Shown here: piece by piece, positions 31,468 through 58,051 of the stretch
Numbering within the stretch: position 1 is the first letter of the stretch
Layout: every line of letters begins with the position of its first letter
NCBI RefSeq assembly: GCF_006345805.1
Contig: NC_043001.1
Coordinates: 125,054,001-125,118,000 of the forward strand
DNA from: Octopus sinensis
Lineage: Eukaryota
DNA: 64,000 nt
Direction: 5' to 3'
Position numbers and translations under genes: made by a program
Notes under the pieces: model-generated
What the model saw: only the letters and a program-made list of their open reading frames with translations
What the model was told of the DNA's origin: nothing
Databases searched by the model: none

Positions 31468-31589
31468 TCAATAAAAACGACTATGAGCTACATTGTTCTT
31501 CTGCTTGTAGTGCTTTACACCAATAACAATGCCAGCAATTGCCACTCCAATAGTTACAGCAATAGCAACATATATTCCCATCCAGGCCT
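31468..31589 (-). CDS. Terminal coding exon: transmembrane helix plus short basic tail; AWMGIYVAIAVTIGVAIAGIVIGVKHYKQKNNVAHSRFY*
   Basis: Acceptor ctttaatattttctattttcacag, hydrophobic run of about 23 aa followed by KHYKQK, TGA at 31468-31470. Confidence 0.9.
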
Positions 31590-32189
31590 CTGTGAAAATA
31601 GAAAATATTAAAGAGATTATTAATTATTAATAGTACATATCTTTCATATAATAAAGACAGCTGCTTATTAATTAGCTGTGATTATTAACATTTATTAAAA
31701 GAAAGTAATTATTAAAGTCTTCACTGCCTAGAAAATTCTTATAAATTTCAATTTTTAATATATTTTTATTAAAATATAGTTTTCAAGGATCCTATTGCAG
31801 ATTTCCATTACATGCCAATCACGAAACACACACTTATTGTGATATGCTTTTTAACATCTTATATTTGTATCCTTTTCCTTCTACTGCTTCCTAACTCTCT
31901 CTTCTTTGTTTACTTCTATTTCTATATCCTTAAAATTTCTCACCCCTTTCCAACAACTTTCTCCAGTCTTTATCTCTGTAACTCAATTTGAATCCCTTCC
32001 CCTGTTATTTCATTTAACAATTTTCATCTTTCTCTTGCATACTCCTTTACTTTCATTTTCTTTCAACACTCACTCTCTACTGCCTTTAATTGTTTAAAAA
32101 TAAGTGATTACAAAAATTTTTTACAATATTTATATCAAAATTACACAGAAATTATGTATATTTCTATTTTAATTCAGTTATATACAAAC

Positions 32190-33300
32190 CATCATCATTT
32201 AGCATCTACCTTCCATACTGGCATGGTTTAGATGGTTTGACCGATACTGATAAGCTGCACTAGGTTCCAATCTGATTTGGCACAGTTTCTACTGTTGGAT
32301 GTCCCTTCCTAACACCAACCACTGAGGGAGAGGGGCTTTGCGGATCCATGGAATAAGCTGCCGGACGAGATGGTGAGGATGCCGACGACCGCTCGGTTCA
32401 AAGTCTCCCTTGACCACAAGTGGCCTGAACTCTTTACATGAACACCACCCTGTACATAACTCCATGTCCCCCTACATGACCTTGCTTTTTGCTTTTTGAG
32501 CCAAAAAATTAACTAACAATGGGTGCTTTTGACGTGCCATTAGCATGGGTGCTAGTTACATGACACTGGCACCAGCTACAACAACGATTTCACTTAGCTT
32601 GACACGTCTTCTCAAGCTTGGCATATCACTAAAGGTCTCAGTTACTTATCACCTCCATGAGGCCCAACATTCAGAGTGCTTTTAACGTGTCACTGGCATC
32701 AGCCAGGAGTACAATTTCACTTGGCTTGACGAGTCTTCTGAAGCATGCATATCACCGAAGGTCTCAATCCCTTGTCATTGCCTCTATGAGGCCCAACGTT
32801 CAAAGATCATGCTTCATCACCTTGCCCCATGTCTACGTGGGCCTACTGTTCCACAGGTTACCTCCACAAAGATTGGCATTTTTTTTTTCAGCTGTCCACC
32901 TCCATATACATCACATGACCATACCAGCGCAGTCATCTCTCTTGTACATGTGATGCCTCTTATGCCCAGCTTTTCTTTCAAGATGCTTACACTGTCATAC
33001 ATGCACACCCAGTGAAGCATACTAGGTTAATTTCTTTCAAGCCTATGCATGCCCTCAGCGGTCACAGCCCATGTTTCACTGCTGTGCAGCATGGCTGTTC
33101 ACACACAGGAATCCCTCAGACAATAGGCTTTCACATTCTGACAACATTGCTTGCAACAACATATGCTAACCCCTGAGTAGCAGCCTTCCCTTTGGATAAG
33201 CTCCAGAGGCATAGAGAAGGGAACTTGCAAGCCTAGGAAACTACTAATCATATTAAAGGTATCTTGCCCAAGCTTGCACAAATTCTGGAAGATCAACATT
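32190..33300 (-). mobile_element. Degenerate family D-related RTE LINE remnant (similar remnants near 17500-17660, 20960-21400, 44120-44450)
   Basis: Frameshifted similarity to the 39224-40111 ORF and its 3' UTR. Confidence 0.65.
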
Positions 33301-34589
33301 AAGACAGGGATCTTGTATGCACAGGCAGAGATTGTTTTCTATTAAGGCCCCCTATAACCAATGCCTTGTGGGTAAATTTAGTAAACAAACCGTAGAAACC
33401 TGTCATGTTTCTTTGGATTTGTCTCTCACTGATTGATAAAGATGGTTTTATTTATTGCTTTTAATTTACTTTTTTTTCACCATTAGCCTAGTGGTATAGC
33501 TACCAACACAAAAAGTACTAAAATATGTACTAGAAGTGAATTGAACAAATACACCCCTTCAAGCTACTATCCTAGCAATAATAGTAACAATAATTGTTTT
33601 TAATAAATGCACAAGACCAGAAATTAGGAGGAACAGGTAGTCAATGACCTTGGCAGAATTTGAACTCAGAATGTAAAGACAGACAAAATGCTACTAAGCA
33701 TTTTGCCCGGCATGCTAACCATTCTGCCAACTCACTGCCTAAATAATAATCCTTTCTACTATAGGCACAAGGCCTGATATTTCGGAGAAGGGGTTAAGTT
33801 GATTATGTTGACCCAGTACACAACTGGTAATTATTTTATTGACCCCGAAAGGATGAAAGGCAAAGTTGACCTCAACAGAGTTTGAACTCAGAACGTGAAG
33901 ACAGACGAAATACCACTAAACATATTTTCTGGCGTGCTAATGATTCTGCCAGCCTGCTGCCGAAGACCAGAAAATTTGGGGATGGGATAAGTCGACTGCA
34001 TCAACCCCAGGGCTCAACTGATGTTTATTCTATCTACCCTGTAGGAATGAAAGCAAAGTCGACCTTGGTAGAACTTGAACTCAGAATGTGAAGACGACAA
34101 AATACCATTAAGCATTTTGTCCAGCATGATAAGAATTCTGCCAGTTTGCCAATTTTGGGAGAAGGGGGACCAGTAGATAAATTGACCTCAGTGTGTAACT
34201 GGTACTTAATTTCTCAACCCCAAAAGGATGAAAGGCAAAGTTGACTCCTGCAGCATTTGAACTCAGAACATGAAAACAGACGAAAAACCACTTAACATTT
34301 TTCCCAACATGCTAATTATTCTGCCAACTCGTCATCTTGATGATGATGATAATAATCCTTTCTACTAAAGGGACAAGGCCTGAAATTTAGGGGCAGGGGA
34401 CTAGTCGATTACACCAACCCCAGTGTTTCACTGGTACTTAATTTACTGACCCAGAAAGGATGAAAGGCAAAGTTGACTTTGGCGGAATTTGAACTCAAAA
34501 TATTGCAATGTGCAAAATACCGCTAAGCATTTCATCCAGAGTGCTAACAATTCTGCCAGCTTATCGCTTTGATGATAATAAGTCCTTAC

Positions 34590-34726
34590 CGTGGCTTAAT
34601 CCAGAGCATTTGCTATCCAAAACCTTTTTCAGACTTTTGTCCAAGACAACAGACATAAAATGTCTGGAACCGGGACTACATTCGCCTGCAGTGTCTAATG
34701 CACATTTCCTCACTTCTTTTTCCAAA
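34590..34726 (-). CDS. Coding exon, phase 2 to 1; LEKEVRKCALDTAGECSPGSRHFMSVVLDKSLKKVLDSKCSGLSH(E)
   Basis: Acceptor ctttatatttaatttcag, donor gtaagg, 137 nt open, phase-compatible. Confidence 0.9.
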
Positions 34727-35717
34727 CTGAAATTAAATATAAAGAATAATGCAAATTAACCAATCAAACTATTTAATCAGAGAAAAATGAAAAAGAATAA
34801 CTGAGCTTAAGGTAATAAACTACAAAACTGATCCTTATTACCATAAACCATTGCATTGCACCTTATTTAGAGAAGGGGTACATAGAAATAAGGAACTATG
34901 TGCCTTGACAGTACAATCTATGCTTATTTCTTTCTTTCTCAGCAAAACAAATATATACTAATATGAAACAAAAAGTTATAAAAAAATCAAACAAACAAAA
35001 AACAGTTTATTTAGCACAATGTGTCTTCTACCACAGCCCCAAACCAACTTTTAAGCTTTGAGTGAATTTGGTAGATGAAAACTGAAAAAAGCTTGTCATA
35101 TATGTATCATCATCATTGTTTTAACGATTACTTATCCATGCTTACATGAATCACCCAGAATTCTGAGTGACCCCTGTTAGGATGTTGAGGCGAGGTTTCT
35201 TAGCTGGATGACCGTCCTGTCACAAACCATTGCTAGTTTGCAAGCAAGGTAATATTTCCTCCATAACCAGACAAGTTTTCGTAGACATGAAAAGAAGCCA
35301 CTGCTTCTTTATTTCTTTTAAATTAAAGAAATATACATTTCTTTATTGCCCACAGGGAGCTAAACACAAAGTGATTAAGTCGATTATGTCGACACCGGTG
35401 CGTAACTGGTACTTATTTAATTGACCCCGAAAGGATGAAAGGCAAAGTCGACCTCGGCGGAATTTGAACTCAAAACGTAACGGCAGACGAAATACGACTA
35501 CGCATTTCGCCTGGCGTGCTAACGTTTCTGCCAGCTCGCCGCCTTAAATATAGATCTCTATATCATACCTCCTTAGTAGCTTATTACCTGATCGTGACAG
35601 CCACTTTGACAAAAAAAAAAAAAATAATAATAATAATAATAAGACCCCCCCCCCACCGCTGGCGCACACAACAATAAAAGTTCAATTAAAACTAGCCTAT
35701 AATCAAATTATACTTAC

Positions 35718-35835
35718 GCACAAACTTCTTCAATACTATGTACATGTAAGTGCTGAACTTTCATTCTCTCGGTGCATGTCTTTGTCTTTTTGAGATAGTT
35801 GGTATCATTGAAACATTGTGAATATTCCAAGAACT
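35718..35835 (-). CDS. Coding exon, phase 1 to 2; FLEYSQCFNDTNYLKKTKTCTERMKVQHLHVHSIEEVC(A)
   Basis: Acceptor tataatttttatcttcag, donor gtaagt, 118 nt open, phase-compatible. Confidence 0.9.
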
Positions 35836-36191
35836 CTGAAGATAAAAATTATAAAACAAAATGATTTCTTACACTGGAATATGGATGAAGACTGTAGTTG
35901 AAATACTCATGTATTTTAATCTATTGACCCTGGAGAGATGATAAAGCCAAATCCTGCCTAACCATTTTCATACCAGCCTGCACCAAGACCATTCTTGGTT
36001 CTATGGTACAAACCCTACATCAAAATTTGCTGTTAATTTATATTTTGAAACATCAGCTTAATAATGACAAGTTATTTTAATATAGTCTTCATTTTCTTTT
36101 AATTTAAAGAAAAACAGAATATTTCAACTGAAACAAGGTAACGAAAGGTTAAATCATAGTGGCAAAGAACTAAACAACAGAAATACATTAA

Positions 36192-36410
36192 CCCTTTAGT
36201 GTTCAGATTATTCTATCAAACATAATGCTTATTGATTCCCATTGATTTGAATTAATCGTGCATTATCTCATATCTTCAAGATCTTGATGGTGTAATTACT
36301 TAATGTAGAATAACATTGTAGGGTAGGTGTGAGAGCCTGGATCTGGTCAGTTTGAACATAAAACAGATTAACTATTTTGGCCGGATATGGCCGGTTTAAA
36401 TACTAAAGGG
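36192..36410. mobile_element. piggyBac-like MITE; partial copies near 1981-2395, 28557-28630, 29485-29600, 60727-60800
   Basis: TTAA on both sides; TIR ccctttag / ctaaaggg. Confidence 0.8.
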
Positions 36411-37348
36411 TTAAATCCAATACCCAACAATTTCTGTTATTTCCCCACCACCACACCCAATAACAAAGGTTTCTAACAGAGATACAAAGCCATAAATTCA
36501 GGGTGTGAGAGAGAGAGAGAGAACAGTTGATTACATTAATCCCAATACTTGACTGATATTTTATTAGCCCTACTCCCCATCTCATCCTTATAAGGATGAA
36601 AAGCAAAGTTGATGTTAGTAAAACCTGAACTCAGAAAGAATGTAATGGGCTGCTACAAGTATAGGGTGTTCAAAAAGTTTCTCCACAGTAAGTATTTTAT
36701 TGCAAAATAAATATTTATAAGATGGTATAAAACTACAAGACTTAAAAAAACTTTATAAGAGGTGTTGTCTATTTTCAATACATAAGTTAACTCTTTAACA
36801 CATGTTTTTGAAAGACATCTCGGAGAAAAAAAAAATTCACTGCAGAGAGATTTTTTGAACACTGCATCAAGTATTCTGACACCAGCATCTCTGCCAATCA
36901 ATTGCCCTTATAATTTTCAATATAGGCACATGGCATCAAACAGAGGAGGGAACAGTCAAATCAACCCCAGCACATGACTGGTACTTTATTATTGACCCTG
37001 GAAGGATGAAGTGCAAAATTAATCTTGGAGGAGGTTGAACTCAGAAGTAGAGGGTAATAGCTAAATACCACAAGGCATTTTGTCCAGTGCTTTAATGAGT
37101 TTTGCCAATAGATTAAATCTTTCATATATTTTGCCAATCGATTAATTCTTTCATATATTTTGCCAACAAGGCCCATCTATACATACATATCACAAATAGT
37201 AAACATACAGGGCTATATAAACAAATTTATATAAAAATGAGGCATGCAGCAAGGTATCCGTAAACTATCTTTACGACTTCCATAATTTATTTTATCTATT
37301 GTAGTTGAGATCTTTCAATCAATTCCTTTGCATGTTAAATATTAAAGT

Positions 37349-37390
<42 letters not shown>

Positions 37391-37581
37391 TTCTCTTTTA
37401 CTTGTTTCAGTCATTTGACTGCGGCCATGCTGGAGCACCGCCTTTAATTGACCAACTCAACCCCGGGACTTATTCTTTTTGTAAGCGCAGTACTTATTCT
37501 ATCAGTCTCCTTTGCCGAACCGCCAAGTGACGGGGACATAAACACACCAGCATCAGTTGCCAAGCAATGCTAAGGGGACAG

Positions 37582-37633
<52 letters not shown>

Positions 37634-38210
37634 GACGGGCTTCTTTCAGTTTCCGTCTACCAAATTCACTCACAAGGCTTTGGTCGGCCCGAGGCTACAG
37701 TAGAAGACACTTGCCCAAGGTGCCACGCAGTGGGACTGAACCCGGAACTATGTGGTTGGTAAACAAGCTACTTACTACACAGCCACTCCTATATAAAATT
37801 TAAAATGAGGGTGAAATTGATATTAATCAAATTAATGTTCAATTTTTCACCCTCATTTTAAATTTATATGTTCTCTAACTGGCATAACTCACTACAGAGA
37901 ATTATTTACGAGATTTTAGCGTGCCAAAACAAAGACTTTTGAGAAATAACCCTAAGTGTAATTAGTTGAAATGTATACATGTCCAATCTCATGTGGACAT
38001 TTCGTGTATAGTTCTTTCTCTTTTACTTGTTTCAGTCATGCTGGAGCACCGCCTTTAGTCGAGCAAATCAACCCCGGGACTTATTCTTTGTAAGCCCAGT
38101 ACTTATTCTATCGGTCCCTTTTCCCGAACCGCTAAGTGACGGCGATGTAAATACACCAGCATCGGTTGTCAAGCAATGCTAGGGGGACAAACACAGACAC
38201 ACACACACAC

Positions 38211-38252
<42 letters not shown>

Positions 38253-38652
38253 GACAGGCTTCTTTCAGTTTCCGTCAACCAAATCCACTCACAAGGTTTT
38301 GGTCGGCCCGAGGCGATAGTAGAAGACACTTGCCCAAGGTGCCACGCAGTGGGACTGAACCCGGAACCATGTGGTTGGTAAGCAAGCTACTTACCAGACA
38401 GCCACTCCTGCGCCTATGTTCTGCAAATTATATTTGCAATGACGATCATGCTGAGGAGCTACAGACAAATTGCATAAGTAAAATTACGTAAATATTGATA
38501 GCGAAACATGTCCATGATTAATCTATATTTTTGTTATTTCTCATTTGTCTTGCTCAATTACATTGACGTTTGCTGAATTTTCTTAGTGATAAGACCATAG
38601 CAGATCTACTTCCAGCATAAGGGCTGTCCACGTTGTGGTCATCCCTCATATC

Positions 38653-40117
38653 ATCATCGTTTAACGTCCGTTCTCCATGCTAGCATGGGTTGGACGGTTC
38701 GACCAGGGATCTGGGAAGCCAGGAGGCTGCACCAGGCTCCGGTCTTATCTGGCAATGTTTCTACAGCTGGATGCTCTTCCTAATGCCAACCACTCCGTGA
38801 GTGTAGTGGGTGCTTTTTACGTGCCACCTGTACTGGAGCCAGGCGAGGCTGGCATCGGCCACGGTCGGATTGGTGCATTTTACATGCCACCTGCACGGAA
38901 GCCAGTCGAGGCGGCACTGGCTTCGGATGGTGCTTTTTACGTACCACCGACACGGAAGCCAGTCGAGGCCACGATTCGGATAGTGCTTTTTACGTATCTC
39001 CAGTCCAGGGGTCCTGGCATCTGCCGGGTGCCAGTCATAGGATTGGTTCAATTTTGATTCTGATTTCGATTTCACTTGCCCCAACAGGTCTTCGCAAGCA
39101 AAGGGGGGGTTGGCATAGGTGCCTGTCGTCGGATGAGGTTCGATATCGACTTCGCTTGCCTCAACAGGTCTTTGTGTGTCCAAGGGAGGAAAGGCATGCA
39201 TAAGTGGGCTAGACTCACTTGTCCTACCTGGTCTTTTCACGCACAGCATATTTCCAAAGGTCTCGGTCGCAGATCATTTCCTCAGTGAGACCTAAAGTTC
39301 GAAGGTCGTGCTTCACCACCTCGTCCCAAGTTTTCCTGGGTCTACCTCTTCCATGGGTTCCCTCCACTGCTAGGGATTGGCACTTTTTCACACACCTATC
39401 TTCATCCATTCTCGCCACATGACTATACCAGCGCAATCGTCTCTCTTGCACACCACAACTGATGCTCCTTAGGGCCAACATTTCTCTCAGGGTACTAACG
39501 CTCTGTCGAGCATGCACACTGACATTACACATCCATCGGAGCATACTGGCTTCATTTCTCGCAAGCTTACGCATGTCCTCAGCAGTCACGGCCCATGTTT
39601 CACTGCCATGTAGCATGGCTGTACGTACACATGCATCATACAGTCTGCCTTTTACTCTGAGCGAGAGGCCTTTAGTCACCAGCAGAGGTAAGAGCTCCCT
39701 AAACTTTGCCCAGGCTATTTTTACTCTAGCCGTTACACTTTCAGCACACCCACCCCCACTACTGACTTGGTCACCAAGATAACGGAAGCTATCAACTACT
39801 TCTAGTTTTTTCCCCTGGAAAGTGACGGAAGTTATTTTCTGCAGATTTTCAGAGGTTAATGCTCCCGAGCATCTGCCACATACAAAAACTATCTTCCCAG
39901 TTAGCCTTCCTTTGACATTGCTGCACCTCTTATGTGTCCATAGCTTACACTGGGTACATCTTATAGAGTTTCTACCTACACCTTTTCTACAGATCGAGCA
40001 GGGCCATCTTCCTGAAGACATTTGTGGATTGTCTACCTTCCTACTTATTAGTACTTTGGTTTTAGCTAGGTTGACTCTAAGGCCCCTCGATTCTAGACCC
40101 TCCTTCCACACCTGGAA
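38653..40117 (-). mobile_element. 5'-truncated RTE-clade LINE (family D): 295 aa RT C-terminal ORF plus about 570 bp 3' UTR ending in (GAT)n
   Basis: ORF 39224-40111 with RT thumb-region motifs (GLRVNLAKTK, FRYLG, MLHGSETW, RGRPRKTW). Confidence 0.9.
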
Positions 40118-40133
40118 CTTCTCCTATATATAT

Positions 40134-40350
40134 ATATGAGGGGGTAATGAAAAGTTCCTAGTTTGAAGGATACCATGAAAGACCTGGTTGGAGGCCTGAC
40201 CTTCTGACTTTTTACAGGGCTTAGAATAATTGAAGGACCACTGCAAATGTGTGAATCTGAGAGGGGAACATGTTGAATAAAATCATAACTAATCCTGAAT
40301 TTTTTCTCTTTTACCAAAAGCCAGAAACTTTTCAGCAGCGCCTTGTATAT
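40134..40350. mobile_element. Mariner-derived MITE
   Basis: Imperfect TIRs (tatgagggggtaatgaaaagttc / gaaacttttcagcagcgccttgta); encodes a KCVNLRGE.VE*-like end. Confidence 0.6.
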
Positions 40351-42188
40351 GTTTTTCCAATAAACTCTAAGCTATCCTTACTTTTCATATTTTTCTGAAT
40401 TCTTCAAATTGTAATGGTAATTTATGGACAACCCTGTATTAAGATTTCGTTTTTGTATTTGATTTGCAAGATTCTTTGTGTGAATTCATGTGTTGAAGCA
40501 TATTTTAAGTTGCAGAAGTAAATGAACACACACACACACACACTGTATAGATATGAAGTATGTTTTCTAACAACATTGTTTATGATATGTAACATCTTGG
40601 ACAAATGTCTACTGGCCTCAGAAAGGTCAATGCCTTGTAAATGGAATTATTGATTTGCTGGAAAACATATAGCAGTCTATCATGAGAATAGGGTGTTGTA
40701 TGCACATTAAGACCTATATTTGCATGTTATATTTGAGCAAAGAGAGTGATGCCATGTTTATCATTCCATGCAGGTAATAATATATACTGATACTCTGAGT
40801 TTTCAAAGAGCAACAAAATAAAAAAAAAAAAACTTAAGGCATCTAGCTATAAAACACTGCACCAAAACAGAGCTTCGTCCAACCTATACCAGAATGAAAA
40901 ATGGATGTAAAAGACAAGTGAACACAATGAAGGCAATCTATTCACACATGGGTGAGGATGAAGAACCACCATTTGAATTTGATCAGAGCACCCCATTCTA
41001 AACCATGACTACCCTCAGCCTTCTCATACTCTGTATCCAGGTACTCAATGTTCAGATCTTAAAGTGGCCAGGTACTGCTGGTGGTTTTTACATTCGCAGC
41101 CAATCTGGGGCCCATTTCCTTCTTGCGAATCTGCACTTAATCATTTCCTGATTTTTCTTGCACATCATTTGAGTTGCCCACCAGTCACTTGTTGGCTTCT
41201 TCAAAGACTAAACTGCATGCAATTCCCAAGAGGAGCTATTTTAATAAGCAGCTAATTCAGTAGTTCAAATAACCAAATAATCATCACAGAAACCAACAAA
41301 CGTGTGTCCTTGCACCAGATTTAATTATAATGTGCAGTTCTGTGAGCAAGTGCCTTCCACCATTGTTTCTGGTCATAAACCCAAGTTTTGCAAATGAACC
41401 TGGGTACATGGAAGGGTTGAACTGGTTATGTGCAGACTTAATCCCAAGTTCAACACCACCACCTGACTCCTAAGGAGACTTTAGTGGAGTTTATTCTGTT
41501 GAAAGCATTCAGACCAGATTGCCAGTTTTAAAATGACAGTCTAGTGTTTGGGTGGTTTTAACAGAGGCCTTTTTTTCCTTTTTTAGAAGTAGGTTCATAT
41601 ATATGAAAACCTGGCGCAAATACATGCAACTGAATGGTCCCAGCTAAAGGCACCCACATACCAGGTTGGTGGTGCTAAATCAGGTGAAAGATTAAGTTTA
41701 ACAACCAAGCAGGGCATGATGGGATTTGAACTCAGAACACAAAGAGCCAAAACAAATACCACAAGGTATCTGGTCCAACATTGTTACGGTTCCACGAATA
41801 CACTGCTCTGTTTTTGTTTTTGTTTTTACTTTTACACTGAACCTCAACATGATTTTCAACACTGAGTGCCAAATGCCCCATGAGGTATCCATCTAGGCAC
41901 TCACATAACTGTCATCATCTGTTGTAAGCATCCAGACTAAATAGCCAGGTTTAACAATCTCCTTCAGTGCCTTCAGGAGACTCCAATCAATTACAAACAT
42001 TCAGACCAGTTTACCATCTGAAAATAAGTTAATCTTAAGTTACTTTGACTAGTCTCAGAGACCCTACACACAGGCTACTAATGCTGTCCTACCTTCTCTG
42101 ATCAAGCAGCAAAAAGAAATGAATCTAAAACACATCAGCAAAAATATTTTGTCAAACAATTGTTGAAAGCAAAACAGCAATTAATTAC

Positions 42189-42298
42189 CTCCACGTCCTG
42201 GGCCACACATGTAATCAAAGACCCCATACAAGTCAACTTTATCAAAATAACAGGAAGTATACAAAGGTTTGGTACATTCCTTGAACTCTGGAACACCC
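42189..42298 (-). CDS. Coding exon, phase 2 to 1; GVPEFKECTKPLYTSCYFDKVDLYGVFDYMCGPGRG(E)
   Basis: Acceptor ctttatatcttttaacag, donor gtaatt, 110 nt open, phase-compatible on both sides. Confidence 0.88.
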
Positions 42299-42400
42299 CT
42301 GTTAAAAGATATAAAGAATTGTTTTAATGTTTCTCTTATTTCAACTGGTTGTTTTGCATTTATAATATATACAAATTATACAAATAAAAAATATATATAC

Positions 42401-42557
42401 AGGAGTGGCTGTGTGGTAAGTAGCTTGCTAACCAACCAAATGGTTCCGGGTTCAGTCCCACTGCGTGGCATCTTGGGCAAGTGTCTTCTGCTATAGCCCC
42501 GGGCCGACCAATGCCTTGTGAGTGGATTTGGTAGACGGAAACTGAAAGAAGCCAGTC

Positions 42558-42600
<43 letters not shown>

Positions 42601-42836
42601 TGTGTGTGTGTGAATATGTTTGTGTGTCTGTGTTTGTCCCCCTAGCATTGCTTGACAACCGATGCTGGTGTGTTTACGTCCCCGTCACTTTGCGGTTCGG
42701 CAAAAGAGACCGATAGAATAAGTACTGGGCTTACAAAGAATAAGTCCCGGGGTCAATTTGCTCGACTAAAGGCGGTGCTCCAGCATGGCCGCAGTCAAAT
42801 GACTGAAACAAGTAAAAGAGTAAAAAGAGTAAAGAG
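42401..42836 (+). mobile_element. tRNA-derived SINE family A (complete example) with central (TA)n/(TG)n; copies also at about 527-1215, 1582-1888, 2874-3277, 17700-18093, 19843-20212, 29010-29355, 37392-37790, 38018-38416, 49456-50215, 52160-52535, 56750-57150, 57850-58845, 61640-62080, 63640-64000
   Basis: A-box TGGCTGTGTGG, B-box GGTTCAGTCCC, CORE-like ccttgggcaagt, (gtaaaaga)n tail. Confidence 0.9.
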
Positions 42837-44469
42837 TACTGTTTCTACTTTGTGTGGAGTTTCACTTTCACTTTGATAGTCAAGGGGTTACTGGAAATCA
42901 TTTCCATTTCAATAGCATTGTTGTAGAGATTATCAATCCAGAATAGGAAAACCTTTGATAAAACCATTCTAACCATGACCATTCCACCTTATTTTCAGAA
43001 AATGCAACCAGGCATAGCTAAGTGTTTAAGAACTTCGCTTTTCAACCATATGGTTTTGGGTTCAGTTTCACTGTGAAGCATATTGGGCAAGTGTCTTCTG
43101 CTCAATATACCTGAGCTTTGGTTACAGATGGTGACATCATTGTTTGTGGTTGAGCTCAAGCAATTATGTTAGGTTGATAGTTTCTGTCGAAAAATTGTCT
43201 GCCAGCACTTCATCATCATCGTTTAACATCTGTTTTCCATGCTAGCATGGGTTGGACGGTTTGACTGGGATCTGCGAAGCGAGGAGGCTGCACCAGGCTC
43301 CAATCTGATCTGGCAGTGTTTCTACAGCTGGATGCCCTTCCTAATGCCAACCACTCCGTGAGTGTAATGGATGCTTTTTACATGCCACCAGCACAGATTG
43401 TACTTTTGAATTTTGCTAGAACTAAAAAAAATCCTTTACTTGACAAACAGGTAAGGTTTGGTAACAACAAAAGCATCCGGTCATAAAAATCCTACCTTAA
43501 TTTCCTCCTGTCTAAGCCATGTTAGTATGCAAAAACAGACTTTAAACAAAAAAAACTACATTTATTCAATTTTTTTTATAGTTTTTTTTGTTTTGTTTTT
43601 AAGCTGATAAAATGTTGTTAGAGAAATTTGATTCTTATTTTAGTAGAGAAAGAGGGGGGGGAAGGAGAACTAGCATGATACTATAGTTAGAGTTGACAGT
43701 AGGAAGATCACTTAACCACAGATTATATCTGCCACAAGAAGTTTCTTATTTGTGTCAGCAAAGGCAAAATGGATGTAAAAGAGGATGATAATTTCCCCCA
43801 TCTTAAAACATCTTCAGACAACATGCTGAGCGAGAGTGGAGCAGAAAGAGAGAAATAGATTTAAAAAGGTATACAAAATATGAGGCCACCATAAAAAAAC
43901 TCCCTTACAAGTTTGCTTTCGTTGCTCTTATTGTTGAAGGTCTCCAAATGAGAATAAATTCAGTTTCCAGTGAAATGTGGAAGATATTTCAGAAGCATTT
44001 TCCAAAGAGCCAAGAAAGAAATTAAAAAGCACCACTTCCTAATGATGTGATAACCACAACTAATATTTTGCTGATAGCATGGGCAAAGTACGCTACTGCA
44101 TGGTAACAAGACATGGGCCATGAATTCCTTGACTGGAAAAGCTAGCAAGAAATGAGATGAGATGAGATGTTCGATGTCAGTGAACATGAATGATGAAGTA
44201 TAAATGAACTGAAAGAAAAACCAAGTATAAGAGGAATCATCTGTAGTGTGCAAGAGAGGAAATTGCATGTGATGTAAATGGAGGATAACAGGAGCTCAAA
44301 GTGAATAGTATCTGTGGAAGAGGGAGATGAAGGAAGACTCAAGATGAGGTGGTAAAAAATAATCTCCAAACAGATGACCTAGGACTATGTTGGTTGATGA
44401 GAGTGCTGCAGAAGACAGAACCTACTGCACAAACTAGTTGAAATGCCTATAAAGTACCTATTTTTTTTT

Positions 44470-44696
44470 TTACTACCCACAAGGGGCTAAACACAGAGAG
44501 GACAAACAAGGACAGACACACGGATTAAGTCATTACATCGACCCCAGTGCATACCTGGTACTTAATTTATCGACCCCGAAAGGATGAAAGGCAAAGTCGA
44601 CCTCGGCGGAATTTAAACTCAGAACGTAACGGCAGACAAAATGCGGCTACGCATTTCGCCCGGCGTGCTAACGTTTCTGCCAGCTCGCCGCCTTAA
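44470..44696 (-). mobile_element. tRNA-derived SINE family C; copies also at about 160-524, 4381-4600, 14172-14405, 20540-20860, 33620-34570 (cluster), 35335-35546, 36900-37110
   Basis: Head ggcggcgagctggcagaaacgttagc, B-box gagttcaaattcc, body gcctttcatcctttcggggtcgat. Confidence 0.88.
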
Positions 44697-45489
44697 AGTA
44701 CCCCCATGACACTGCCTATTGCTTATTCTACACCCTCAAGCTTCCCTCCCATCTCTTCTATCCATTTTACCTATTGCATTCTGAACTGACCTACTCCCAA
44801 CACTTACATCCTACTACTGTGTCTCCCTTTGTCCTTCCAAATCAGGAGTGGAGGCGTGTGGCTTAGCGGTGAGGACTCGTGATCATAAGATTGTGGTTTC
44901 GATTCCTGGACTGGGTGACACATTGTGTTCTTGTGCAAAACACTCCATTTCACGTTGCTCCTGTCCACTCAGCTGGAAAAAATAATTCTGCGACAGACCA
45001 GCATCCCATCCAGGTGAGAAATTTGTACAGCCTTCATGAGTCAACAGGACTTTAGAAGGTAACTTTTTTTTTTCCTACAAATCATGATACCTGAATAGGG
45101 AGGGGATGAATAACACTCTTGTAATTTTCACTCACTCTTCCAGAGTATTCAGTCAGCACACTTTACCTTGGCCATGTTACTTTGAGAATATGCTCTGGTA
45201 CCTTCTCATTTACTCTCTCACAATAAATCCACTCTGCCCATCATACCTAAAGTTATCACCCCCTCTCTCTCCTCTATTCCTTCTTCCAGTAGTGAATTTT
45301 GCTTCTCAAGTCATAAGGTGACATCAATACTAGAAAGATAAAAAGTACACGCTTTTAAGTAGTTGGTAAATCAAGTAAAGACAACACAGGGTTACAAGGA
45401 CTTTTTAGTTTTGCTGACAGTAAGACATGCTTTTCAGTCCTAGTGCCATGATAAAAAGCACCCAGTACACTGTCAAGTAATTAAGAAGG

Positions 45490-45803
45490 GCAGCCAGCGC
45501 CGCCTCGACTGGCTTCTGTGCTGGTGGCACATAAAAAGCACCATCCGAACATGGCCGATGCCAGCTCCACCTTGACTGGCTTCTGTGCTGGTGGCACGTT
45601 AAAAGCACCAACCGATCGTGGCCGATGCCAGACTCCCCTGGCACGCAAAAAGCACCCACTATACTCGCGGAGTGGTTGGCGTTAGGAAGGGCATTCAGCT
45701 GTAGAAACACTGCCAGATCAGACTGGAGCCTGGTGCAGCCCCTGGTCGAACCATCCAACCCCTGCTAGCGCAGAAAACGGACGTTAAACGATGATGATGA
45801 TGA
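45490..45803 (+). mobile_element. Family D 3' UTR fragment
   Basis: Same family, (GAT)n tail. Confidence 0.8.
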
Positions 45804-46184
45804 TCCATCCATAGAAAGCATATTGAACCAAAGATATCTTGATTTGTGGGATCTTGTCAAACGTCCAGCCCATACCAAGATGAAAAATAAATGAAAAATG
45901 ATGACTTCAAGTAGAAGTTATGTGCTTGAATAGTAAAGATATTGGACTGCTAGAAATAGCAGCTAAATCTGTTTCAAATCAAACATAACTACAATTTTGA
46001 AAATACTAATTTTTTTACCCGTTTCACTGAATTGTAACCATACTAGAACATCGCCTTTAAAGGGTTTCAGGCAATCATTTTGTCCTTAATACTCAGTCTC
46101 CTTTTCGTTAAATTTATTTTTTTATCGATTTATTGCAAACGTAAAGACAAATACAAGAACATGCAAATTTTCCACACCTATGAT

Positions 46185-46660
46185 GTGGCCGATGGCAGCG
46201 CCGTCTCGACTGGCTTCTGTGCCGGTGGCACATAAAAAGCACCATCCGAACGTGGCCGATGCTAGCGCCGCCTTGACTGGCTTCTTTGCCGGTGACACAC
46301 AAAAAGGACCATCCGAACGTGGCCGATGCCAGCGCCGCCTTGACTGGCTTCTGTGCCGGTGACACACAAAAAGCACCATCCGAACGTGGCTGATGCCAGC
46401 ACCGCCTTGACTGGCTTCCGTGCCGGTGGCACGTTAAAAGCACCGACCGATGCCAGACTCCCCCGGCACCTGTGCCGGTGGCATGTAAAAAGCACTCACT
46501 ACACTCGCGGAGTGGTTGGCGTTAGGAAGGGCATCCAGCTGTAGAAACACTGCCAGATCAGACTGGAGCCTGGTGCAGCTCCTGGCTTCCCAGACCCCGG
46601 TTGAAGCGTCCAGCCCGTGCTAGCGCGGAAAACGGACATTAAACGATGATGATGATGATG
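46185..46660 (+). mobile_element. Family D 3' UTR fragment with tandem subrepeats
   Basis: Same sequence family, (GAT)n tail. Confidence 0.85.
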
Positions 46661-47318
46661 AATTTTACTCACAAAGTGTTATTTTACAGTTTCAGGCTAT
46701 AGTAGAAAACAATTGTCCAAGATGGTGTACAATGGGACTGAACCTGAAACCACTTGATTGCAATGTTAAGTTAACCATTCAACCATGCATGAAAGGAAAG
46801 TAGCAGGGAGAGGACAAACAGCTAGAAATGTCTTTAATCATACATTGACTTGTACAATCAAACTAACTTGCAACTACGATTAAAAGGATATAAACAACAT
46901 CAAAGGCTCCACAATACAAAAAGCATGGGAGGACGGGCGAACAGATGGTGACGTAAGAGAAATGTCAGACAGAACTTTGAAGCTTCTGAAAGCTCAAGAA
47001 TGAAATGCAGTGAGGTGGGGAAAATATTATTTACTGCTTATAATTTAGCACAAATGTTAAGGCTAATGCTAGTAGTAGCTAAGCACACAGAGTTAACATC
47101 ATTAAACAGCTTCAAATGAATGCAACAAAAATGGCTGCTATGTGGTTGCTCCACAAGACCTGCTAGAAATAACAGCTAAATCTTTAAATTACATCTATGC
47201 TGTCTTTGAAATGATCTCATTAGTAAATAAGATCCTATATGCAATATTTGTTATTTATATATTACGGAGATGTACTTGCATAGCAAGTGATTTGATCAGA
47301 GATCGTGTGCTGGAACGA

Positions 47319-47584
47319 AAACTATTGCAGCATGGAAGGTGTTTGTAAGCCATTTAAGAAACACACAAAAGCCGTTCGATTCACTTCAACATTTAAGTTT
47401 AATTTGTCAAAATATTTTCATCGCTTTAAGACCGCGACCTGTTCACTACAGATTTTTGTCAGTGAACAGGTTGCGGTCTGAAAGCGACGAAAATACTTTG
47501 ACAAATTATATTTAAATGTTGAAGTGAATCGAACGGCTTTTGTTTCTTAAATGGCTTACAAACACCTTCCACGCTGCTATAGTT
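47319..47584. mobile_element. Palindromic foldback element (arms of about 125 bp); split relative at 22835-23195
   Basis: Long imperfect inverted repeat centred on 47448-47460. Confidence 0.7.
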
Positions 47585-48329
47585 ATTTATATAATATAAA
47601 CATATATAAAAGATAGCGGTCATGGCTGATTATAGGTCTGCTCAGTCATGGATTACATGGGTTAAACAACAACCACCACAATAAGGCATGAACCAATGAT
47701 GGATATTATGTTGATGGGAATAGCAACCAACTCATTCCTCACCTTTCATGCCCTAAATACAGGGATGGATTGGGTAATGTGTGAAAAGAAAAAAAAAGGG
47801 AATGATCACAGCAGGGAATGTGTATGACCATAAATCAAGTCATTCGGAGTAGACCTATGGGGTAAACAACTATATCCTTTTAGAAGTTTCATCTGCTAGA
47901 AATAGCACAAATAGTAAGGTCTCCCATGATTTGCAATCATCCTTCATGGACGGGTCCAAATATGTTTCATCCCTAGGACTACGAGTCAAATTTATTGCTT
48001 CAGCTAGGTATCTTTAGAGAGATATAAGTCCAGGGACGATAAGTTCAACAGAAGCTATGTCCAGCCATTTAGGATAGAGTGCTCAAAGTTTGAAGTTCTT
48101 GATGAACATTACTAGAAGAAAAAAAAAAAAAACTAACGATGTGGTCAAGGTTGGAATGTCTGATCCTAATCAACTTAGGAGATTCAGTGATGTGAGTAGT
48201 AGTAATATGATGTAAATTAGTTAAGTAATTTGATCCAATGTTTACACTGCCTCTCAGTAGGTAGGAGCAGCAGTTGGGGGAAGATGTGTGCTAAAGAACA
48301 TGGCTGTAAAGAACATTTTACAACTACAA

Positions 48330-48785
48330 AGAAACGAGAGAGAGAGAGCAAGGAAGAAGTTGAGAGAGAGCAAGGAAGAAGTTGAGAGAGAGCAAGGAAG
48401 GAGAGAGAGAGCAAGGAAGAAGAGAGAGAGAGCAAGGAAGAAGAGAGAGAGAGCAAGGAAGAAGAGAGAGAGAGCAAGGAAGAAGAGAGAGAGAGCAAGG
48501 AAGAAGAGAGAGAGAGCAAGGAAGAAGAGAGAAAGAGCAAGGAAGAAGAGAGAGAGAGCAAGGAAGAGAGAGAGAGCAAGGAAGAAGAGAGAAAGAGCAA
48601 GGAAGAAGAGAGAAAGAGCAAGGAAGAAGAGAGAAAGAGCAAGGAAGAAGAGAGAAAGAGCAAGGAAGAAGAGAGAAAGAGCAAGGGAGAAGAGAGAAAG
48701 AGCAAGGGAGAAGTTGAGAGAGAGAGAGAAGAGGAGGGAAGTTGAGAGAGAGAGAGAAGAGGAGGGAAGTTGAGAGAGAGATTGT

Positions 48786-48824
<39 letters not shown>

Positions 48825-48830
48825 GCAGAA
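48330..48830. repeat. Polypurine minisatellite, 21 bp unit (aagaagagagagagagcaagg)
   Basis: Direct reading. Confidence 0.95.
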
Positions 48831-49646
48831 AGACAAATAGAGAGGAGCAGAACCAGAGATAAACAAATAGATATCAAAAGTGTGCAGGATGAAATTGCCG
48901 AATTTTAAGCTCATTTAATAAATATAAACAAAGCTCATAGTGGAGAAACTTGCTATGATATATATATAGGAGAAATCAGTGCAAACAAGCCAGTTCTCTG
49001 TATCATGTGAAATAATGGGTCAATGACAAAAAGTAAAATGTCGTTCCGCAAAAATTAACTGAAAACCGCTTAACTTTAACTCTGTCCTGGCTTCATTGTG
49101 ATATAATCTGTTTATAATTTGCTTTCCAAATCAATAACATACAGAAACAATAGGGTTAAGTCACGTTTATTTTTACTTCTTTCAGTTATTGTTTACCGAA
49201 TCCATTCTGTTAGTCCGGAGTTTCAGAAGTAGAGGGCACATGCCCAAAAGTGATACGCAGTGGGAATGAACCTGGGTAATCTATAATTTACGATGCTCCT
49301 ATTCACAACAAAATGCAACATGGGCACTGGAATGACAAGAAGCTTGCTTAACAAACACATGGAAACTGCCTAGGGAAAGTTTCTTCTTCTACTACAGCTC
49401 TGGGCTGACCAAAGCCTTGTGAGTGGATTTGGTAGACGGAAATTGAAATCTCATAGGCACAGGAGTGGCTGTGTGGTAAGTAGCTTGCTAACCAACCAAA
49501 TGGTTCCGGGTTCAGTCCCACTGCCTGGCACCATGGGCAAGTGTCTTCTGCTATAGCCCCGGGCCGACTAATGCCTTGTGAGTGGATTTGGTAGATGGAA
49601 ACTGAAAGAAGCCTGTCGTGTATATATATTATATATATATTATATA

Positions 49647-49738
<92 letters not shown>

Positions 49739-49750
49739 TATTTTATAGAA

Positions 49751-49805
49751 GGAGCTTCTACAGGACTAGAACTGTTTCATTCAAAAGAAATCATCAGGAA
49801 GCTAC
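49751..49805 (-). ncRNA. Type I hammerhead ribozyme motif, intact-looking core
   Basis: GUAGCUUC-CUGAUGA-UUUCUUUUGAAU-GAAA-CAG-UUCUAGUC-CUG-UA-GAAGCUCC: helix I AGCUUC/GAAGCU, helix II UUC/GAA, helix III ACAG/CUGU, GUA cleavage triplet. Confidence 0.75.
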
Positions 49806-49807
49806 AG

Positions 49808-49862
49808 GTAGCTTCCTGATGATTTCTTTTGAATGCAACAGTTCTAGTCCTGTAGAAGCTCC
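49808..49862 (+). ncRNA. Inverted copy of the hammerhead with mutated core (GAAA to GCAA)
   Basis: Reverse complement of 49751-49805 except for one base in the conserved GAA. Confidence 0.65.
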
Positions 49863-49942
49863 TTCTATAAAATAAATTAATTTACTCTGCTATGTATTGA
49901 GTACCTTATTTACTGTGGTTAACCCCGACTCAACCCGGGACC

Positions 49943-49995
<53 letters not shown>

Positions 49996-50804
49996 GTGTG
50001 TGTGTCTGTGTTTGTCCCCCTAGCATTGCTTGACAACCGATGCTGATGTGTTTACTTCCTCGTCACTTAGCGGTTTGGCAAAAGAGACCGATAGAATAAG
50101 TACTGGGCTTACAAAGAATAAGTCCCAGGGTCGATTTGCTCGACTAAAGGCGGTGCTCCAGCATGGCCGCAGTCAAATGACAAACAAATAAAAGAGTAAA
50201 AGAGTAAAAGAGTATATGCGTGTATGTAGGTTTGTATGTATGAGAGTGTGTGTGTATGAGAGCATGCTTCATAACTGGTTTTAATTAATGTCCCCATAAC
50301 TTAGTGGTTCAGCAAAAGAGACTGACAGAAGTACCAAGCTTTGGAAAAAGTGCTGGGTTCAATTTGCTAGATGAAAAGCCCTTCAAGACTAGGGCCACAG
50401 TCCAATGATTTAAACAACAGATAAAAGATAGCAGTAGCTACTGCATAAGTCAAGGGATGATGTACTGAATGCTGTGAGCAAAAAATTCTTTATGCTAGTA
50501 AATAATCCATATTAGATAACAGTTTAGTATACAAACAAATTAGCTGACATAACAAGCTTTCTGCTGTTAGGGAAGCACTGAGTCAAGAAATATGTATTTA
50601 TAGCTACATACGATAATCTTTTCAGCAACATTGCCGTTGTTAATTTGTTTCAGTAATTAAGACAAGAATGGGTAAAACTATCAGCACAATTGATCTAATA
50701 AGGCTACACAATTTCTACCTAAAACAAATTTCTTTCACAAGATTTGGATCACCCTCAGGATATGGTGGAGAGAGAAGGAAGAGAGGGGAGACAAAGACAG
50801 ATGG

Positions 50805-50859
50805 TGGGGGGGGAGGGGGGAGAGAGGAAAGAGAGAGAGAGGGAAGAGAGAGAGGAAAG

Positions 50860-50890
<31 letters not shown>

Positions 50891-51255
50891 GGAAGAGAGA
50901 GAGAGAGAGGGAAGAGAGAGAGAGAGAGGAGAGGAGAGAGAGGGAAGAGAGAGAGAGGAGGAGAGAGAGGGAGGAAGAGAGAGAGGAGAGGGAAGAGAGA
51001 GAGAGAGGGAAGAGAGAGAGAGAGGGAAGAGAGAGAGAGGGAAGAGAGAGAGAGAGGGAAGAGAGAGAGGGAAGAGAGAGAGAGAGAGGGAAGAGAGAGA
51101 GAGAGAGAGAGGGAAGAGAGAGAGAGAGGGAAGAGAGGGGAGAGAGAGAGGGAAGAGAGAGAGAGGGAAGAGAGAGAGAGAGGGAAGAGAGAGAGAGAGG
51201 GAGAGGAGAGGGAAGAGAGAGAGGGGGAAGAGAGAGAGAAGGAAGAGAGAGAAGA
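50805..51255. repeat. Pure GA polypurine array ((ga)n gggaa units)
   Basis: Direct reading. Confidence 0.95.
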
Positions 51256-51276
51256 CAACAAATGTGTAATACTTAC

Positions 51277-51403
51277 TGACAAAAAGCATTTATCTGTTTC
51301 TTATCTAAATGCTGCATATAATAATTGGAGACGTCAATATTGTGGGGGCTAATTGACCTCAGACAGCTACGCAATGCTAGTGTATCACAATAAGCATTGA
51401 CAT
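51277..51403 (-). CDS. Coding exon (5'-most confidently found) of an unannotated Cys-rich type I membrane protein; phase 1 to phase 2; (D)VNAYCDTLALRSCLRSISPHNIDVSNYYMQHLDKKQINAFC(Q)
   Basis: Acceptor cttctttttttttttttttatacag, donor gtaagt, 127 nt open frame, phase joins to the 42298 exon. Confidence 0.88.
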
Positions 51404-51562
51404 CTGTATAAAAAAAAAAAAAAAAAGAAGAGATAAATTATTTCTTGTTAATGGCGATTTTAGACATTTCTTGGTTTGGTCAGTATGTAAACCTACAGTT
51501 AAATTATTGTAATAAGAAAAACCTCATCTCATTTTACACAAAAAAATTACAGAATCTATACC

Positions 51563-55800: not shown

Positions 55801-55817
55801 TGATATATATATATATA

Positions 55818-56715: not shown

Positions 56716-56747
<32 letters not shown>

Positions 56748-58040: not shown

Positions 58041-58045
<5 letters not shown>

Positions 58046-58051
58046 TATATA

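What the first reader, a model, noticed from the sequence alone, without database searches (positions are those of the whole stretch)
31468..51403. Hidden gene: single-pass membrane protein with two tandem 6-cysteine modules
Seen: five exons with canonical splice sites join in frame to about 204 aa with 12 Cys spaced C-7-C-27-C-8-C-7-C-14-C-12-C-12-C-17-C-8-C-7-C-23-C, followed by a TM helix and a 15 aa tail ending SRFY. None of these exons appears as such in the ORF track. Inference: a small helical disulfide-rich ectodomain, reminiscent of the lineage-expanded DUF19/CPG4-like secreted domains of invertebrates, here membrane-anchored. The C-terminal aromatic pair could be a trafficking signal (compare KRFY of VIP36). 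I cannot name the gene.
Basis: partly seen in the sequence, partly recalled or inferred. Interest (0 to 1): 0.7.

Follow-up and report, generated by a model that had tools for sequence, protein, structure and literature searches.

The report
Octopus membrane protein with neuritin-like modules
This is a real, expressed octopus gene, already in RefSeq as an uncharacterized protein; it encodes a small single-pass membrane protein whose outer part is two disulfide-stapled helical modules distantly related to vertebrate neuritin and to the invertebrate CPG4/DUF19 domains, so it is a remote member of a known kind with unknown function.

Summary
Five minus-strand exons (51277-51403, 42189-42298, 35718-35835, 34590-34726, 31468-31589) have GT..AG borders and join in frame. 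They give 12 Cys at exactly the stated spacing, a TM helix and a 15-aa tail ending SRFY.

The gene is not hidden. It is 100 % identical to RefSeq "uncharacterized protein LOC115211861 [Octopus sinensis]" (219 aa). Three intronless orthologous transcripts break at all four junctions. The signal-peptide exon lies beyond coordinate 64000, and the 3'UTR runs down to about 30588.

Distant relatives, including one from the bivalve Solemya velum, keep all 12 Cys. The Solemya gene keeps the same intron positions and phases (1-2-1-2-1).

On its own the octopus protein only grazes Pfam NRN1 (neuritin; 15.9 bits against a cut-off of 27). The family consensus passes NRN1 (34.5 bits). It nearly passes CPG4 (31 against 32.7) and RGM_N. 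One relative passes CPG4 outright. Both modules align in Cys register with human neuritin.

The AlphaFold2 model is all-helical, with no PDB fold match.

Best reading: a type I surface protein with tandem neuritin-like modules from the NRN1/CPG4/DUF19 superfamily, probably a tethered ligand or co-receptor. That function is inferred, not shown. Interest is modest.

The parts
51277..51403 (-). Coding exon 2 (first exon present in the window). It holds the end of the signal peptide and the cleavage region (H)VNA|Y, plus Cys 1-3 of module 1. A phase-1 intron lies upstream; a phase-2 intron lies in the codon right after Cys3.
   Evidence: Splice sites and frame. It matches transcript blocks L001 178-303 and L014 234-361.
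42189..42298 (-). Coding exon 3: Cys 4-6 of module 1, including the most conserved stretch, YTSCYFDKVD.YGVFDYMCGPGRG. It ends with a phase-1 intron.
   Evidence: The core at residues 71-115 has dN/dS 0.14-0.46.
35718..35835 (-). Coding exon 4: Cys 7-9 of module 2 and the single N-glycosylation sequon N104-D-T. A phase-2 intron lies in the codon right after Cys9.
34590..34726 (-). Coding exon 5: Cys 10-12 of module 2 and the juxtamembrane SGLSH. It ends with a phase-1 intron.
31468..31589 (-). Coding part of the last exon: TM helix (WMGIYVAIAVTIGVAIAGIVIGV), 15-aa cytosolic tail KHYKQKNNVAHSRFY and the stop codon.
   Evidence: Hydropathy.
30588..31467 (-). 3'UTR, the continuation of the last exon. 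The lower limit is a minimum, set by the end of the orthologous transcript L014. An AATAAA lies at 31156.
   Evidence: The blastn block L014 725-1779 matching window 31590-30588 at 88 % identity is continuous.
51404..64000 (-). Part of intron 1. The signal-peptide/5'UTR exon is not in the window.
   Evidence: No peptide or blastn match of the 5' parts of P0001, L001 or L014 anywhere in the window.

Best explanation
The region is most of the Octopus sinensis gene LOC115211861.

Shown:
- It is a six-exon, expressed, conserved gene.
- It encodes a 219-aa type I membrane protein: signal peptide, about 160-aa ectodomain, one TM helix and a 15-aa cytosolic tail.
- The ectodomain is a 12-Cys unit built from two tandem 6-Cys helical modules.
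- Each module is encoded by two exons, with a phase-2 intron directly after its third Cys, and is flanked by phase-1 introns.

Inferred from remote homology:
- Each module is a neuritin-like domain. The whole unit belongs to the same superfamily as Pfam NRN1, CPG4 and DUF19, and more loosely RGM_N and DUF1397.

Inferred by analogy only:
- Neuritin is a GPI-tethered surface ligand and the N-terminal domain of RGM is a ligand-binding domain. The octopus protein likewise probably sits at the cell surface as a disulfide-stapled helical binding module.
- Its tail is too short to signal by itself, so it would act as a membrane-tethered ligand or co-receptor.
- The very conserved segment (residues 71-115) would be the structural core. 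The fast-changing helices around it would be the candidate partner-binding surface.
- The conserved C-terminal RFY may tune ER export or retrieval.
For: Gene reality:
- 100 % identity to the RefSeq protein.
- Three orthologous transcripts break at every junction.

Family reality:
- phmmer against 1.84 billion representatives finds P0003 (E 3e-10), P0004 (1.7e-6), P0005 (3.4e-6) and P0007 (3.3e-4). They share the layout of signal peptide, 12-Cys unit and anchor.
- All 12 Cys plus Y87 and G92 are invariant.
- The Solemya velum gene has the same intron positions and phases.

Neuritin/CPG4/DUF19 link:
- NRN1 is the top Pfam hit for the octopus protein (15.9 bits) and for the O. bimaculoides orthologue (20.6 bits).
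- The family HMM consensus scores NRN1 34.5 bits (cut-off 27, two stretches), CPG4 31 (cut-off 32.7) and RGM_N 23.3 (cut-off 24.2).
- Each module's consensus separately has NRN1 as its best family (24.5 and 17.9 bits).
- P0004 passes CPG4 (38 bits). P0007 matches DUF19 positions 11-147 of 157.
- hhalign puts Cys1-5 of module 1 and Cys3-5 of module 2 in register with human neuritin (E 0.0018 and 0.001).
- Human neuritin itself grazes the first half of DUF19.

Internal duplication:
- Intron positions are mirrored in the two modules.
- Module against module by hhalign gives E 0.0013, in register.

Fold and constraint:
- The AlphaFold2 model is all-alpha, with pTM 0.66 and ectodomain pLDDT 65-87.
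- The core at residues 71-115 has significantly fewer non-synonymous changes than the rest (Fisher p 0.0003).
Against: - The octopus protein on its own reaches no Pfam cut-off.
- The consensus sequence that does pass is not a natural protein.
- hhalign probabilities are low (15-21 %), and the E-values are for single comparisons.
- There is no PDB match by sequence or by fold (best Foldseek E 0.9, TM below 0.3). The AlphaFold2 model is only moderately confident.
- The anchor is a TM helix plus tail, not neuritin's GPI.
- Overall dN/dS among the octopus orthologues is about 0.8-1.5 and does not differ from 1. That is unlike the well-conserved vertebrate neuritin.
- Nothing here bears on tissue of expression, localisation or binding partner.
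Confidence: 0.65

Rival explanations
1. A fast-evolving recognition or immune-type surface protein. The disulfide scaffold is kept while exposed helices diversify under host-pathogen or self/non-self pressure, as proposed for many secreted Cys-rich families, including infection-induced DUF19 genes of C. elegans.
For: - dN/dS is about 1 overall. It is about 2.1-2.4 in residues 17-70 when O. sinensis is compared with either orthologue, while all Cys and the core are kept.
- 14 of 51 C. elegans DUF19 genes are listed as up-regulated on infection (PMC3534327).
Against: - The elevated dN/dS rests on about 20 substitutions and is not significant (p 0.25).
- There is no local gene expansion and very few paralogues in the databases.
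- No expression data are available.
Confidence: 0.2
2. An extracellular-matrix or proteoglycan core protein in the manner of nematode CPG-4, carrying chondroitin chains.
For: - Relative P0004 passes the CPG4 Pfam cut-off.
- The family consensus scores 31 bits to CPG4.
- P0004 has a Pro/Thr/Arg-rich tail instead of an anchor.
Against: - The octopus protein is membrane-anchored.
- It has only one Ser-Gly (S175-G176), with no acidic context.
- It has no low-complexity GAG-attachment region, and no CPG4 hit of its own.
Confidence: 0.08
3. A resident or cycling protein of the early secretory pathway, kept there by the C-terminal RFY as with KRFY of LMAN2/LMAN2L, rather than a surface protein.
For: - The C-terminal H-x-R-F-Y is invariant in the octopus orthologues.
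- KRFY is described as an ER localisation motif whose loss sends LMAN2L to the plasma membrane (PMC6469342).
Against: - The Lys of KRFY is replaced by S or N.
- Remote relatives end differently (…EKMENC, a long tail, or a GPI-like hydrophobic end), so the motif is not a family feature.
- The related families are extracellular.
Confidence: 0.07
4. A decaying or non-functional gene. The near-neutral dN/dS would reflect loss of constraint.
For: Overall dN/dS is 0.98 (O. sinensis against O. bimaculoides) and does not differ from 1.
Against: - The reading frame is intact in three distinct octopus proteins, with transcripts for the two Logan orthologues.
- All 12 Cys are kept (P about 0.03 under neutrality for one species pair).
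- The core is significantly constrained (p 0.0003).
- The Cys pattern and intron positions are kept as far as a bivalve.
Confidence: 0.02

Closest known systems
Neuritin / CPG15 (NRN1, NRN1L; Pfam PF15056)
   Same: - Small, signal-peptide-led, membrane-tethered extracellular protein.
- One helical domain with six Cys, including the C-x8-C-x7-C core, which both octopus modules align to in register.
- It is the best Pfam family for the protein, for each module and for the family consensus.
- The bivalve relative P0007 even ends in a GPI-signal-like hydrophobic C-terminus.
   Different: - Two modules in tandem instead of one.
- A TM helix plus 15-aa tail instead of a GPI anchor.
- The octopus sequence scores 15.9 bits against a cut-off of 27.
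- The octopus orthologues evolve fast.
- Neuritin's neuronal, activity-regulated role (PMC12715718) is not shown here.
CPG4 domain (PF15481) and DUF19 (PF01579) of nematodes and other invertebrates, including a 'DUF19 domain-containing protein' K1PB63 detected in oyster (PMC10058639)
   Same: - A unit of about 150 aa with 12 conserved Cys in secreted or surface proteins. (That DUF19 is defined by 12 conserved Cys is from my memory of the Pfam description.)
- P0004 passes the CPG4 cut-off.
- P0007 matches DUF19 end to end, though weakly.
- The family consensus scores 31 bits to CPG4.
   Different: - The octopus protein gives no CPG4 or DUF19 hit at E<=10.
- It is membrane-anchored and single-copy, not lineage-expanded.
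- C. elegans DUF19 proteins are mostly small secreted proteins (51 genes, PMC3534327).
N-terminal domain of repulsive guidance molecules (RGM_N, PF06535)
   Same: A disulfide-linked helical domain at the N-terminus of a membrane-tethered protein. There are recurrent sub-threshold hits over the Cys3-Cys5 region.
   Different: - All hits are below the cut-off (best 23.3 against 24.2 bits, and only for the consensus).
- There is no vWD/GDPH autocleavage domain.
- There is no Foldseek match to RGM structures in the PDB.
GAS1 / GFR-alpha (GDNF/GAS1 domain, PF02351)
   Same: Tandem Cys-rich all-helical domains on a membrane-tethered co-receptor. This is the architecture the octopus protein 'works like' under my preferred reading. 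The resemblance is recalled from general knowledge.
   Different: - No Pfam hit at E<=10 for the protein, its relatives or the consensus.
- No Foldseek hit to GFR-alpha structures.
- The Cys count per domain differs.

Membership tests
Neuritin family (Pfam NRN1, PF15056) | Sequence reaches the curated cut-off of the family model (27 bits) | tested here: not met
   The octopus protein scores 15.6-15.9 bits and the O. bimaculoides orthologue 20.6 bits. Only the artificial family consensus passes, at 34.5 bits.
Neuritin family (Pfam NRN1, PF15056) | Six-Cys pattern with a C-x8-C-x7-C core in an all-helical domain | tested here: met
   hhalign puts Cys1-5 of module 1 and Cys3-5 of module 2 on the Cys of human NRN1. 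The AlphaFold2 model is all-alpha.
Neuritin family (Pfam NRN1, PF15056) | Single domain followed by a GPI-anchor signal | tested here: not met
   There are two tandem modules, a TM helix and a charged 15-aa tail. Only the bivalve relative P0007 has a GPI-like end.
CPG4 domain (PF15481) | Sequence reaches the curated cut-off (32.7 bits) | tested here: not met
   The octopus protein gives no hit at E<=10. It is met only by relative P0004 (38 bits). The consensus scores 31 bits.
DUF19 (PF01579) | Twelve conserved Cys in a unit of about 150 aa in a secreted or extracellular protein | tested here: met
   12 invariant Cys lie within residues 21-174, behind a signal peptide. The family definition is recalled from Pfam, not read here.
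DUF19 (PF01579) | Sequence reaches the curated cut-off (23.2 bits) | tested here: not met
   The octopus protein gives no hit. P0007 scores 14.4 bits over profile positions 11-147 of 157.
RGM N-terminal domain (PF06535) | Sequence reaches the curated cut-off (24.2 bits) | tested here: not met
   Scores are 7.3-13.6 bits (octopus), 19.4 (P0007) and 23.3 (consensus).
GDNF/GAS1 domain (PF02351) | Any detectable match to the family model or to solved GFR-alpha structures | tested here: not met
   It is absent from all Pfam scans at E<=10 and from the Foldseek PDB hits.
C-terminal KRFY-type sorting motif (LMAN2/VIP36, LMAN2L) | Terminal K-R-F-Y that controls ER localisation | not testable with these tools
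   The sequence ends S-R-F-Y (N-R-F-Y in the orthologues), so 3 of 4 residues match. The motif's function is taken from PMC6469342. Localisation needs an experiment.

The most novel reading that the evidence does not exclude
The octopus gene may represent an ancient, mollusc-wide family of membrane-anchored 'double neuritins'. The conserved two-exon module (phase 1 / three Cys / phase 2 / three Cys / phase 1) would show that vertebrate neuritin is one half-unit of the invertebrate 12-Cys CPG4/DUF19 domain. That would give neuritin, whose receptor and origin remain unclear, an invertebrate ancestry. It could also give it a cephalopod counterpart acting in neuronal surface signalling.
Probability: 0.3. 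Interest if true: 0.5.

Novelty: new member of a known kind. Interest (0 to 1): 0.3.

Why it matters
The databases carry this protein as 'uncharacterized' with no domain. Here it receives a domain assignment (tandem neuritin-like modules of the NRN1/CPG4/DUF19 superfamily), a corrected gene structure, and evidence of conservation from cephalopods to a protobranch bivalve.

If the link holds, it connects a vertebrate neurotrophic factor of uncertain receptor and origin with large invertebrate families of unknown function. The intron-phase pattern also gives a simple test of that link.

For cephalopod biology it is one more candidate surface molecule. Nothing yet shows a special role.

Tried and rejected
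- **PDB sequence searches.** Searches with the protein and with the family profile gave nothing relevant; IL-20 and AMPK appeared at E 0.2-0.8, which is chance.
- **First AlphaFold2 run.** With a two-sequence alignment it was too poor to use (pLDDT 49). The second run (7 sequences) was usable, but Foldseek against the PDB found no match (best E 0.9, TM below 0.3). No AlphaFold-DB library was on hand.
- **The search for homologous proteins.** With the family alignment it returned only sequences already in the query alignment, and with P0004 it returned only P0004 itself, because the word index is a limit. The taxonomic spread is therefore poorly sampled, and the species of P0003, P0004 and P0005 remain unknown.
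- **Literature search for the SRR run accessions.** No papers found.
- **Signal-peptide exon in the window.** Searched by peptide words and by blastn with transcript 5' ends; it is absent.
- **Paralogues in the window.** tblastn found none.
- **Shared repeats.** None between the remote relatives' transcripts and the window, so this gave no clue to their species.
- **Positive selection in residues 17-70.** Considered and not claimed: dN/dS is about 2, but p is 0.25 on about 20 changes.
- **GFR-alpha/GAS1 membership.** Considered and rejected; there are no hits.
- **Pseudogene reading.** Considered and rejected.

Full report
**What is there.** The window is eukaryotic and repeat-rich. A search for '...SRFY*' placed the last coding exon on the minus strand at 31468-31589. 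Searching minus-strand frames for the stated Cys spacings found the other four pieces.

At nucleotide level each piece is bounded by a polypyrimidine tract plus AG and by GTAAGT, GTAATT or GTAAGG. The coding exons are 51277-51403, 42189-42298, 35718-35835, 34590-34726 and 31468-31589. The intron phases are 1,2,1,2,1.

The joined frame gives 203 residues plus a split first codon. It has 12 Cys with spacing 7-27-8-7-14-12-12-17-8-7-23, then a 23-residue hydrophobic helix, then KHYKQKNNVAHSRFY.

**Is it a gene?** Yes, and it is already annotated.
- The joined protein is 100 % identical to 'uncharacterized protein LOC115211861 [Octopus sinensis]' (P0001, 219 aa).
- A 79 %-identical protein (P0002) sits on a 1,063-nt intronless Logan contig, L001.
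- Its last 150 residues are identical to the truncated O. bimaculoides RefSeq model XP_014789202.1. L001 is therefore most likely an O. bimaculoides transcript.
- L001 and two further orthologous transcripts (L014, L015) align to the window in five collinear blocks whose ends coincide with the four predicted junctions.
- L014 shows that the last exon continues as 3'UTR to at least 30588.
- The first coding exon (MELRLGHIIFLAILV plus one base; a typical signal peptide with cleavage after VNA) is not in the window. Intron 1 is at least 12.6 kb. The other introns are 8,978, 6,353, 991 and 3,000 bp.

**Relatives.** phmmer of P0001 against 1.84 billion representatives gave only five true clusters.

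| Protein | Length | E-value | Architecture |
|---|---|---|---|
| Octopus orthologues | 219 aa | 4.5e-121 | SP, 12-Cys unit, TM, 15-aa tail |
| P0003 | 223 aa | 3e-10 | SP, 12 Cys, TM, short tail |
| P0004 | 381 aa | 1.7e-6 | two 12-Cys units |
| P0005 | 335 aa | 3.4e-6 | SP, 12 Cys, TM, long tail |
| P0007 (Solemya velum) | 243 aa | 3.3e-4 | SP, 12 Cys, Ser-rich spacer, terminal hydrophobic stretch resembling a GPI signal |

P0006 is a Cys-free spurious hit. In the alignment all 12 Cys plus Y87 and G92 are invariant. P0003 and P0005 occur on many short intronless contigs, so they are transcribed.

The Solemya gene (L016) has the same exon plan:
- a phase-1 intron just before Cys1;
- a phase-2 intron in the codon immediately after Cys3;
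- a phase-1 intron six codons after Cys6;
- a phase-2 intron in the codon immediately after Cys9;
- a phase-1 intron shortly after Cys12.

The family and its gene structure therefore predate the cephalopod-bivalve split.

**Two modules.** Each half (Cys1-6 and Cys7-12) is encoded by two exons, is split at the same place (one codon after its third Cys, phase 2), and is flanked by phase-1 introns. The halves share the C-x8-C-x7-C core. They align weakly but in register by BLASTP (E 0.018) and by profile-profile comparison (E 0.0013). An ancient tandem duplication of a two-exon module is the simplest reading. It is inferred, not proven.

**Which known family?**
- Alone, the octopus protein only grazes Pfam. 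NRN1 (neuritin) scores 15.9 bits against a cut-off of 27, and RGM_N is weaker still.
- Relatives graze the same set. P0004 passes CPG4 (38 against 32.7 bits), and P0005 scores CPG4 22.7.
- P0007 scores DUF1397 21.3, RGM_N 19.4, NRN1 17.8 and DUF19 14.4; the DUF19 hit spans profile positions 11-147 of 157.
- The HMM consensus of the family's ectodomain scores NRN1 34.5 bits (above cut-off, two stretches), CPG4 31 and RGM_N 23.3.
- The consensus of each module separately has NRN1 as its best family, at 24.5 and 17.9 bits.
It is not a toxin or a prion. I validated it at 134 bits to PF15056.
- hhalign then places Cys1-5 of module 1 and Cys3-5 of module 2 on neuritin's Cys (E 0.0018 and 0.001).
- Neuritin itself weakly matches the first half of DUF19 (positions 10-83 of 157).

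Together this points to one superfamily in which neuritin corresponds to one module and CPG4/DUF19 to the double unit. No GDNF/GAS1 hit appeared in any scan.

**Structure.** AlphaFold2 with seven sequences gives an all-helical ectodomain with pTM 0.66 and pLDDT 65-87 for most of residues 50-170. Foldseek against the PDB finds nothing (best E 0.9), and PDB sequence searches are empty. No solved structure represents this fold detectably. The AlphaFold database could not be searched here.

**Evolutionary rate.** This was noticed in passing.
- Between O. sinensis and the two orthologous transcripts, dN/dS is 0.98 and 1.47. Between the two transcripts it is 0.82. For O. sinensis against L001 it does not differ from 1 (p 0.87).
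- Residues 71-115 are strongly constrained (dN/dS 0.14-0.46). They have fewer non-synonymous changes than the rest (p 0.0003).
- All Cys are kept, with P about 0.03 under neutrality.
- Residues 17-70 show dN/dS of about 2 when O. sinensis is compared with either transcript, but on few changes (p 0.25).

The gene is functional, but much of its surface evolves fast.

**How it most likely works.**
- Shown: an expressed type I membrane protein with a conserved 12-Cys helical ectodomain, one sequon (N104) and a 15-aa tail.
- Inferred: the ectodomain is a pair of neuritin-like binding modules at the cell surface. Because the tail has no signalling domain, the protein would act as a tethered ligand or co-receptor, as GPI-anchored neuritin (PMC12715718) and other tethered helical Cys-rich co-receptors do.
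- The terminal RFY is invariant in the octopus orthologues but absent from remote relatives. It resembles KRFY, the ER-localisation motif of LMAN2/LMAN2L (PMC6469342), without its Lys. A role in ER export or retrieval is possible but untested.

Rival functional readings are a diversifying recognition molecule, a proteoglycan core, and an early-secretory resident. None is excluded, and each is given with its test.

**Verdict.** The gene is known as a model but had no family assignment. It is a remote, membrane-anchored, tandem member of the neuritin/CPG4/DUF19 superfamily. I rate it a new member of a known kind, of modest interest.

Noticed in passing
window 50820-51252 and 48337-48724: A 430-bp purine-rich (GA)n-like tract begins only about 25 nt downstream of the donor of exon 51277-51403, inside the intron. 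A 21-mer array of 18.6 copies lies 2 kb further on. Both produce long spurious 'RERE/LSLS' ORFs in the ORF track.
   Followed up: partly
window 26709-27483, 52879-53262, 60857-61384, 62648-63319 (+); 39224-40111 (-): Several copies of one retroelement tail share '...FKATVEPILLYGSETWTLSKK...' and give weak RVT_1 plus DUF6451 hits. A 295-aa ORF with a weak PHD-like finger sits in the intron between exons 42189-42298 and 35718-35835, on the gene's strand. All are probably LINE fragments.
   Followed up: partly
window 4267-11355: About 7 kb is almost pure TA/CA-type microsatellite, with GC down to 16 % and strong GC skew. It gives ORFs of up to 618 aa made of Y/I/C/M/V/H.
   Followed up: no
window 38857-38996, 45493-45636, 46185-46444, 23246-23873, 3873-4208: Repeated SINE-like elements contain 57-67-nt tandem units (translating as '...HRHRSQSRRRWH...' or '...DALPNANHS...'). 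They are scattered on both strands within and outside the gene's introns.
   Followed up: no
P0008 (O. bimaculoides XP_014789202.1) against P0002 / L001: The O. bimaculoides RefSeq model is N-terminally truncated: 150 aa, starting at Met70. The transcript L001 encodes the full 219 aa with an identical C-terminal 150 residues.
   Followed up: yes
CDS, residues 17-219 (window exons) against L001 and L014: dN/dS is about 1 overall among the octopus orthologues (0.82-1.47). The 45-residue core is highly constrained. In the TM helix plus tail there are 10 non-synonymous and 0 synonymous differences from L001. The counts are too small to claim positive selection.
   Followed up: partly
L016 (Solemya velum JBHNWI010000380.1), locus 2001-94433: The bivalve homologue spans about 92 kb, with a first intron of about 58 kb. 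It ends in a Ser-rich spacer plus a terminal hydrophobic stretch, which looks like a GPI signal, instead of a TM helix plus tail. The family may therefore switch between GPI and TM anchoring.
   Followed up: partly
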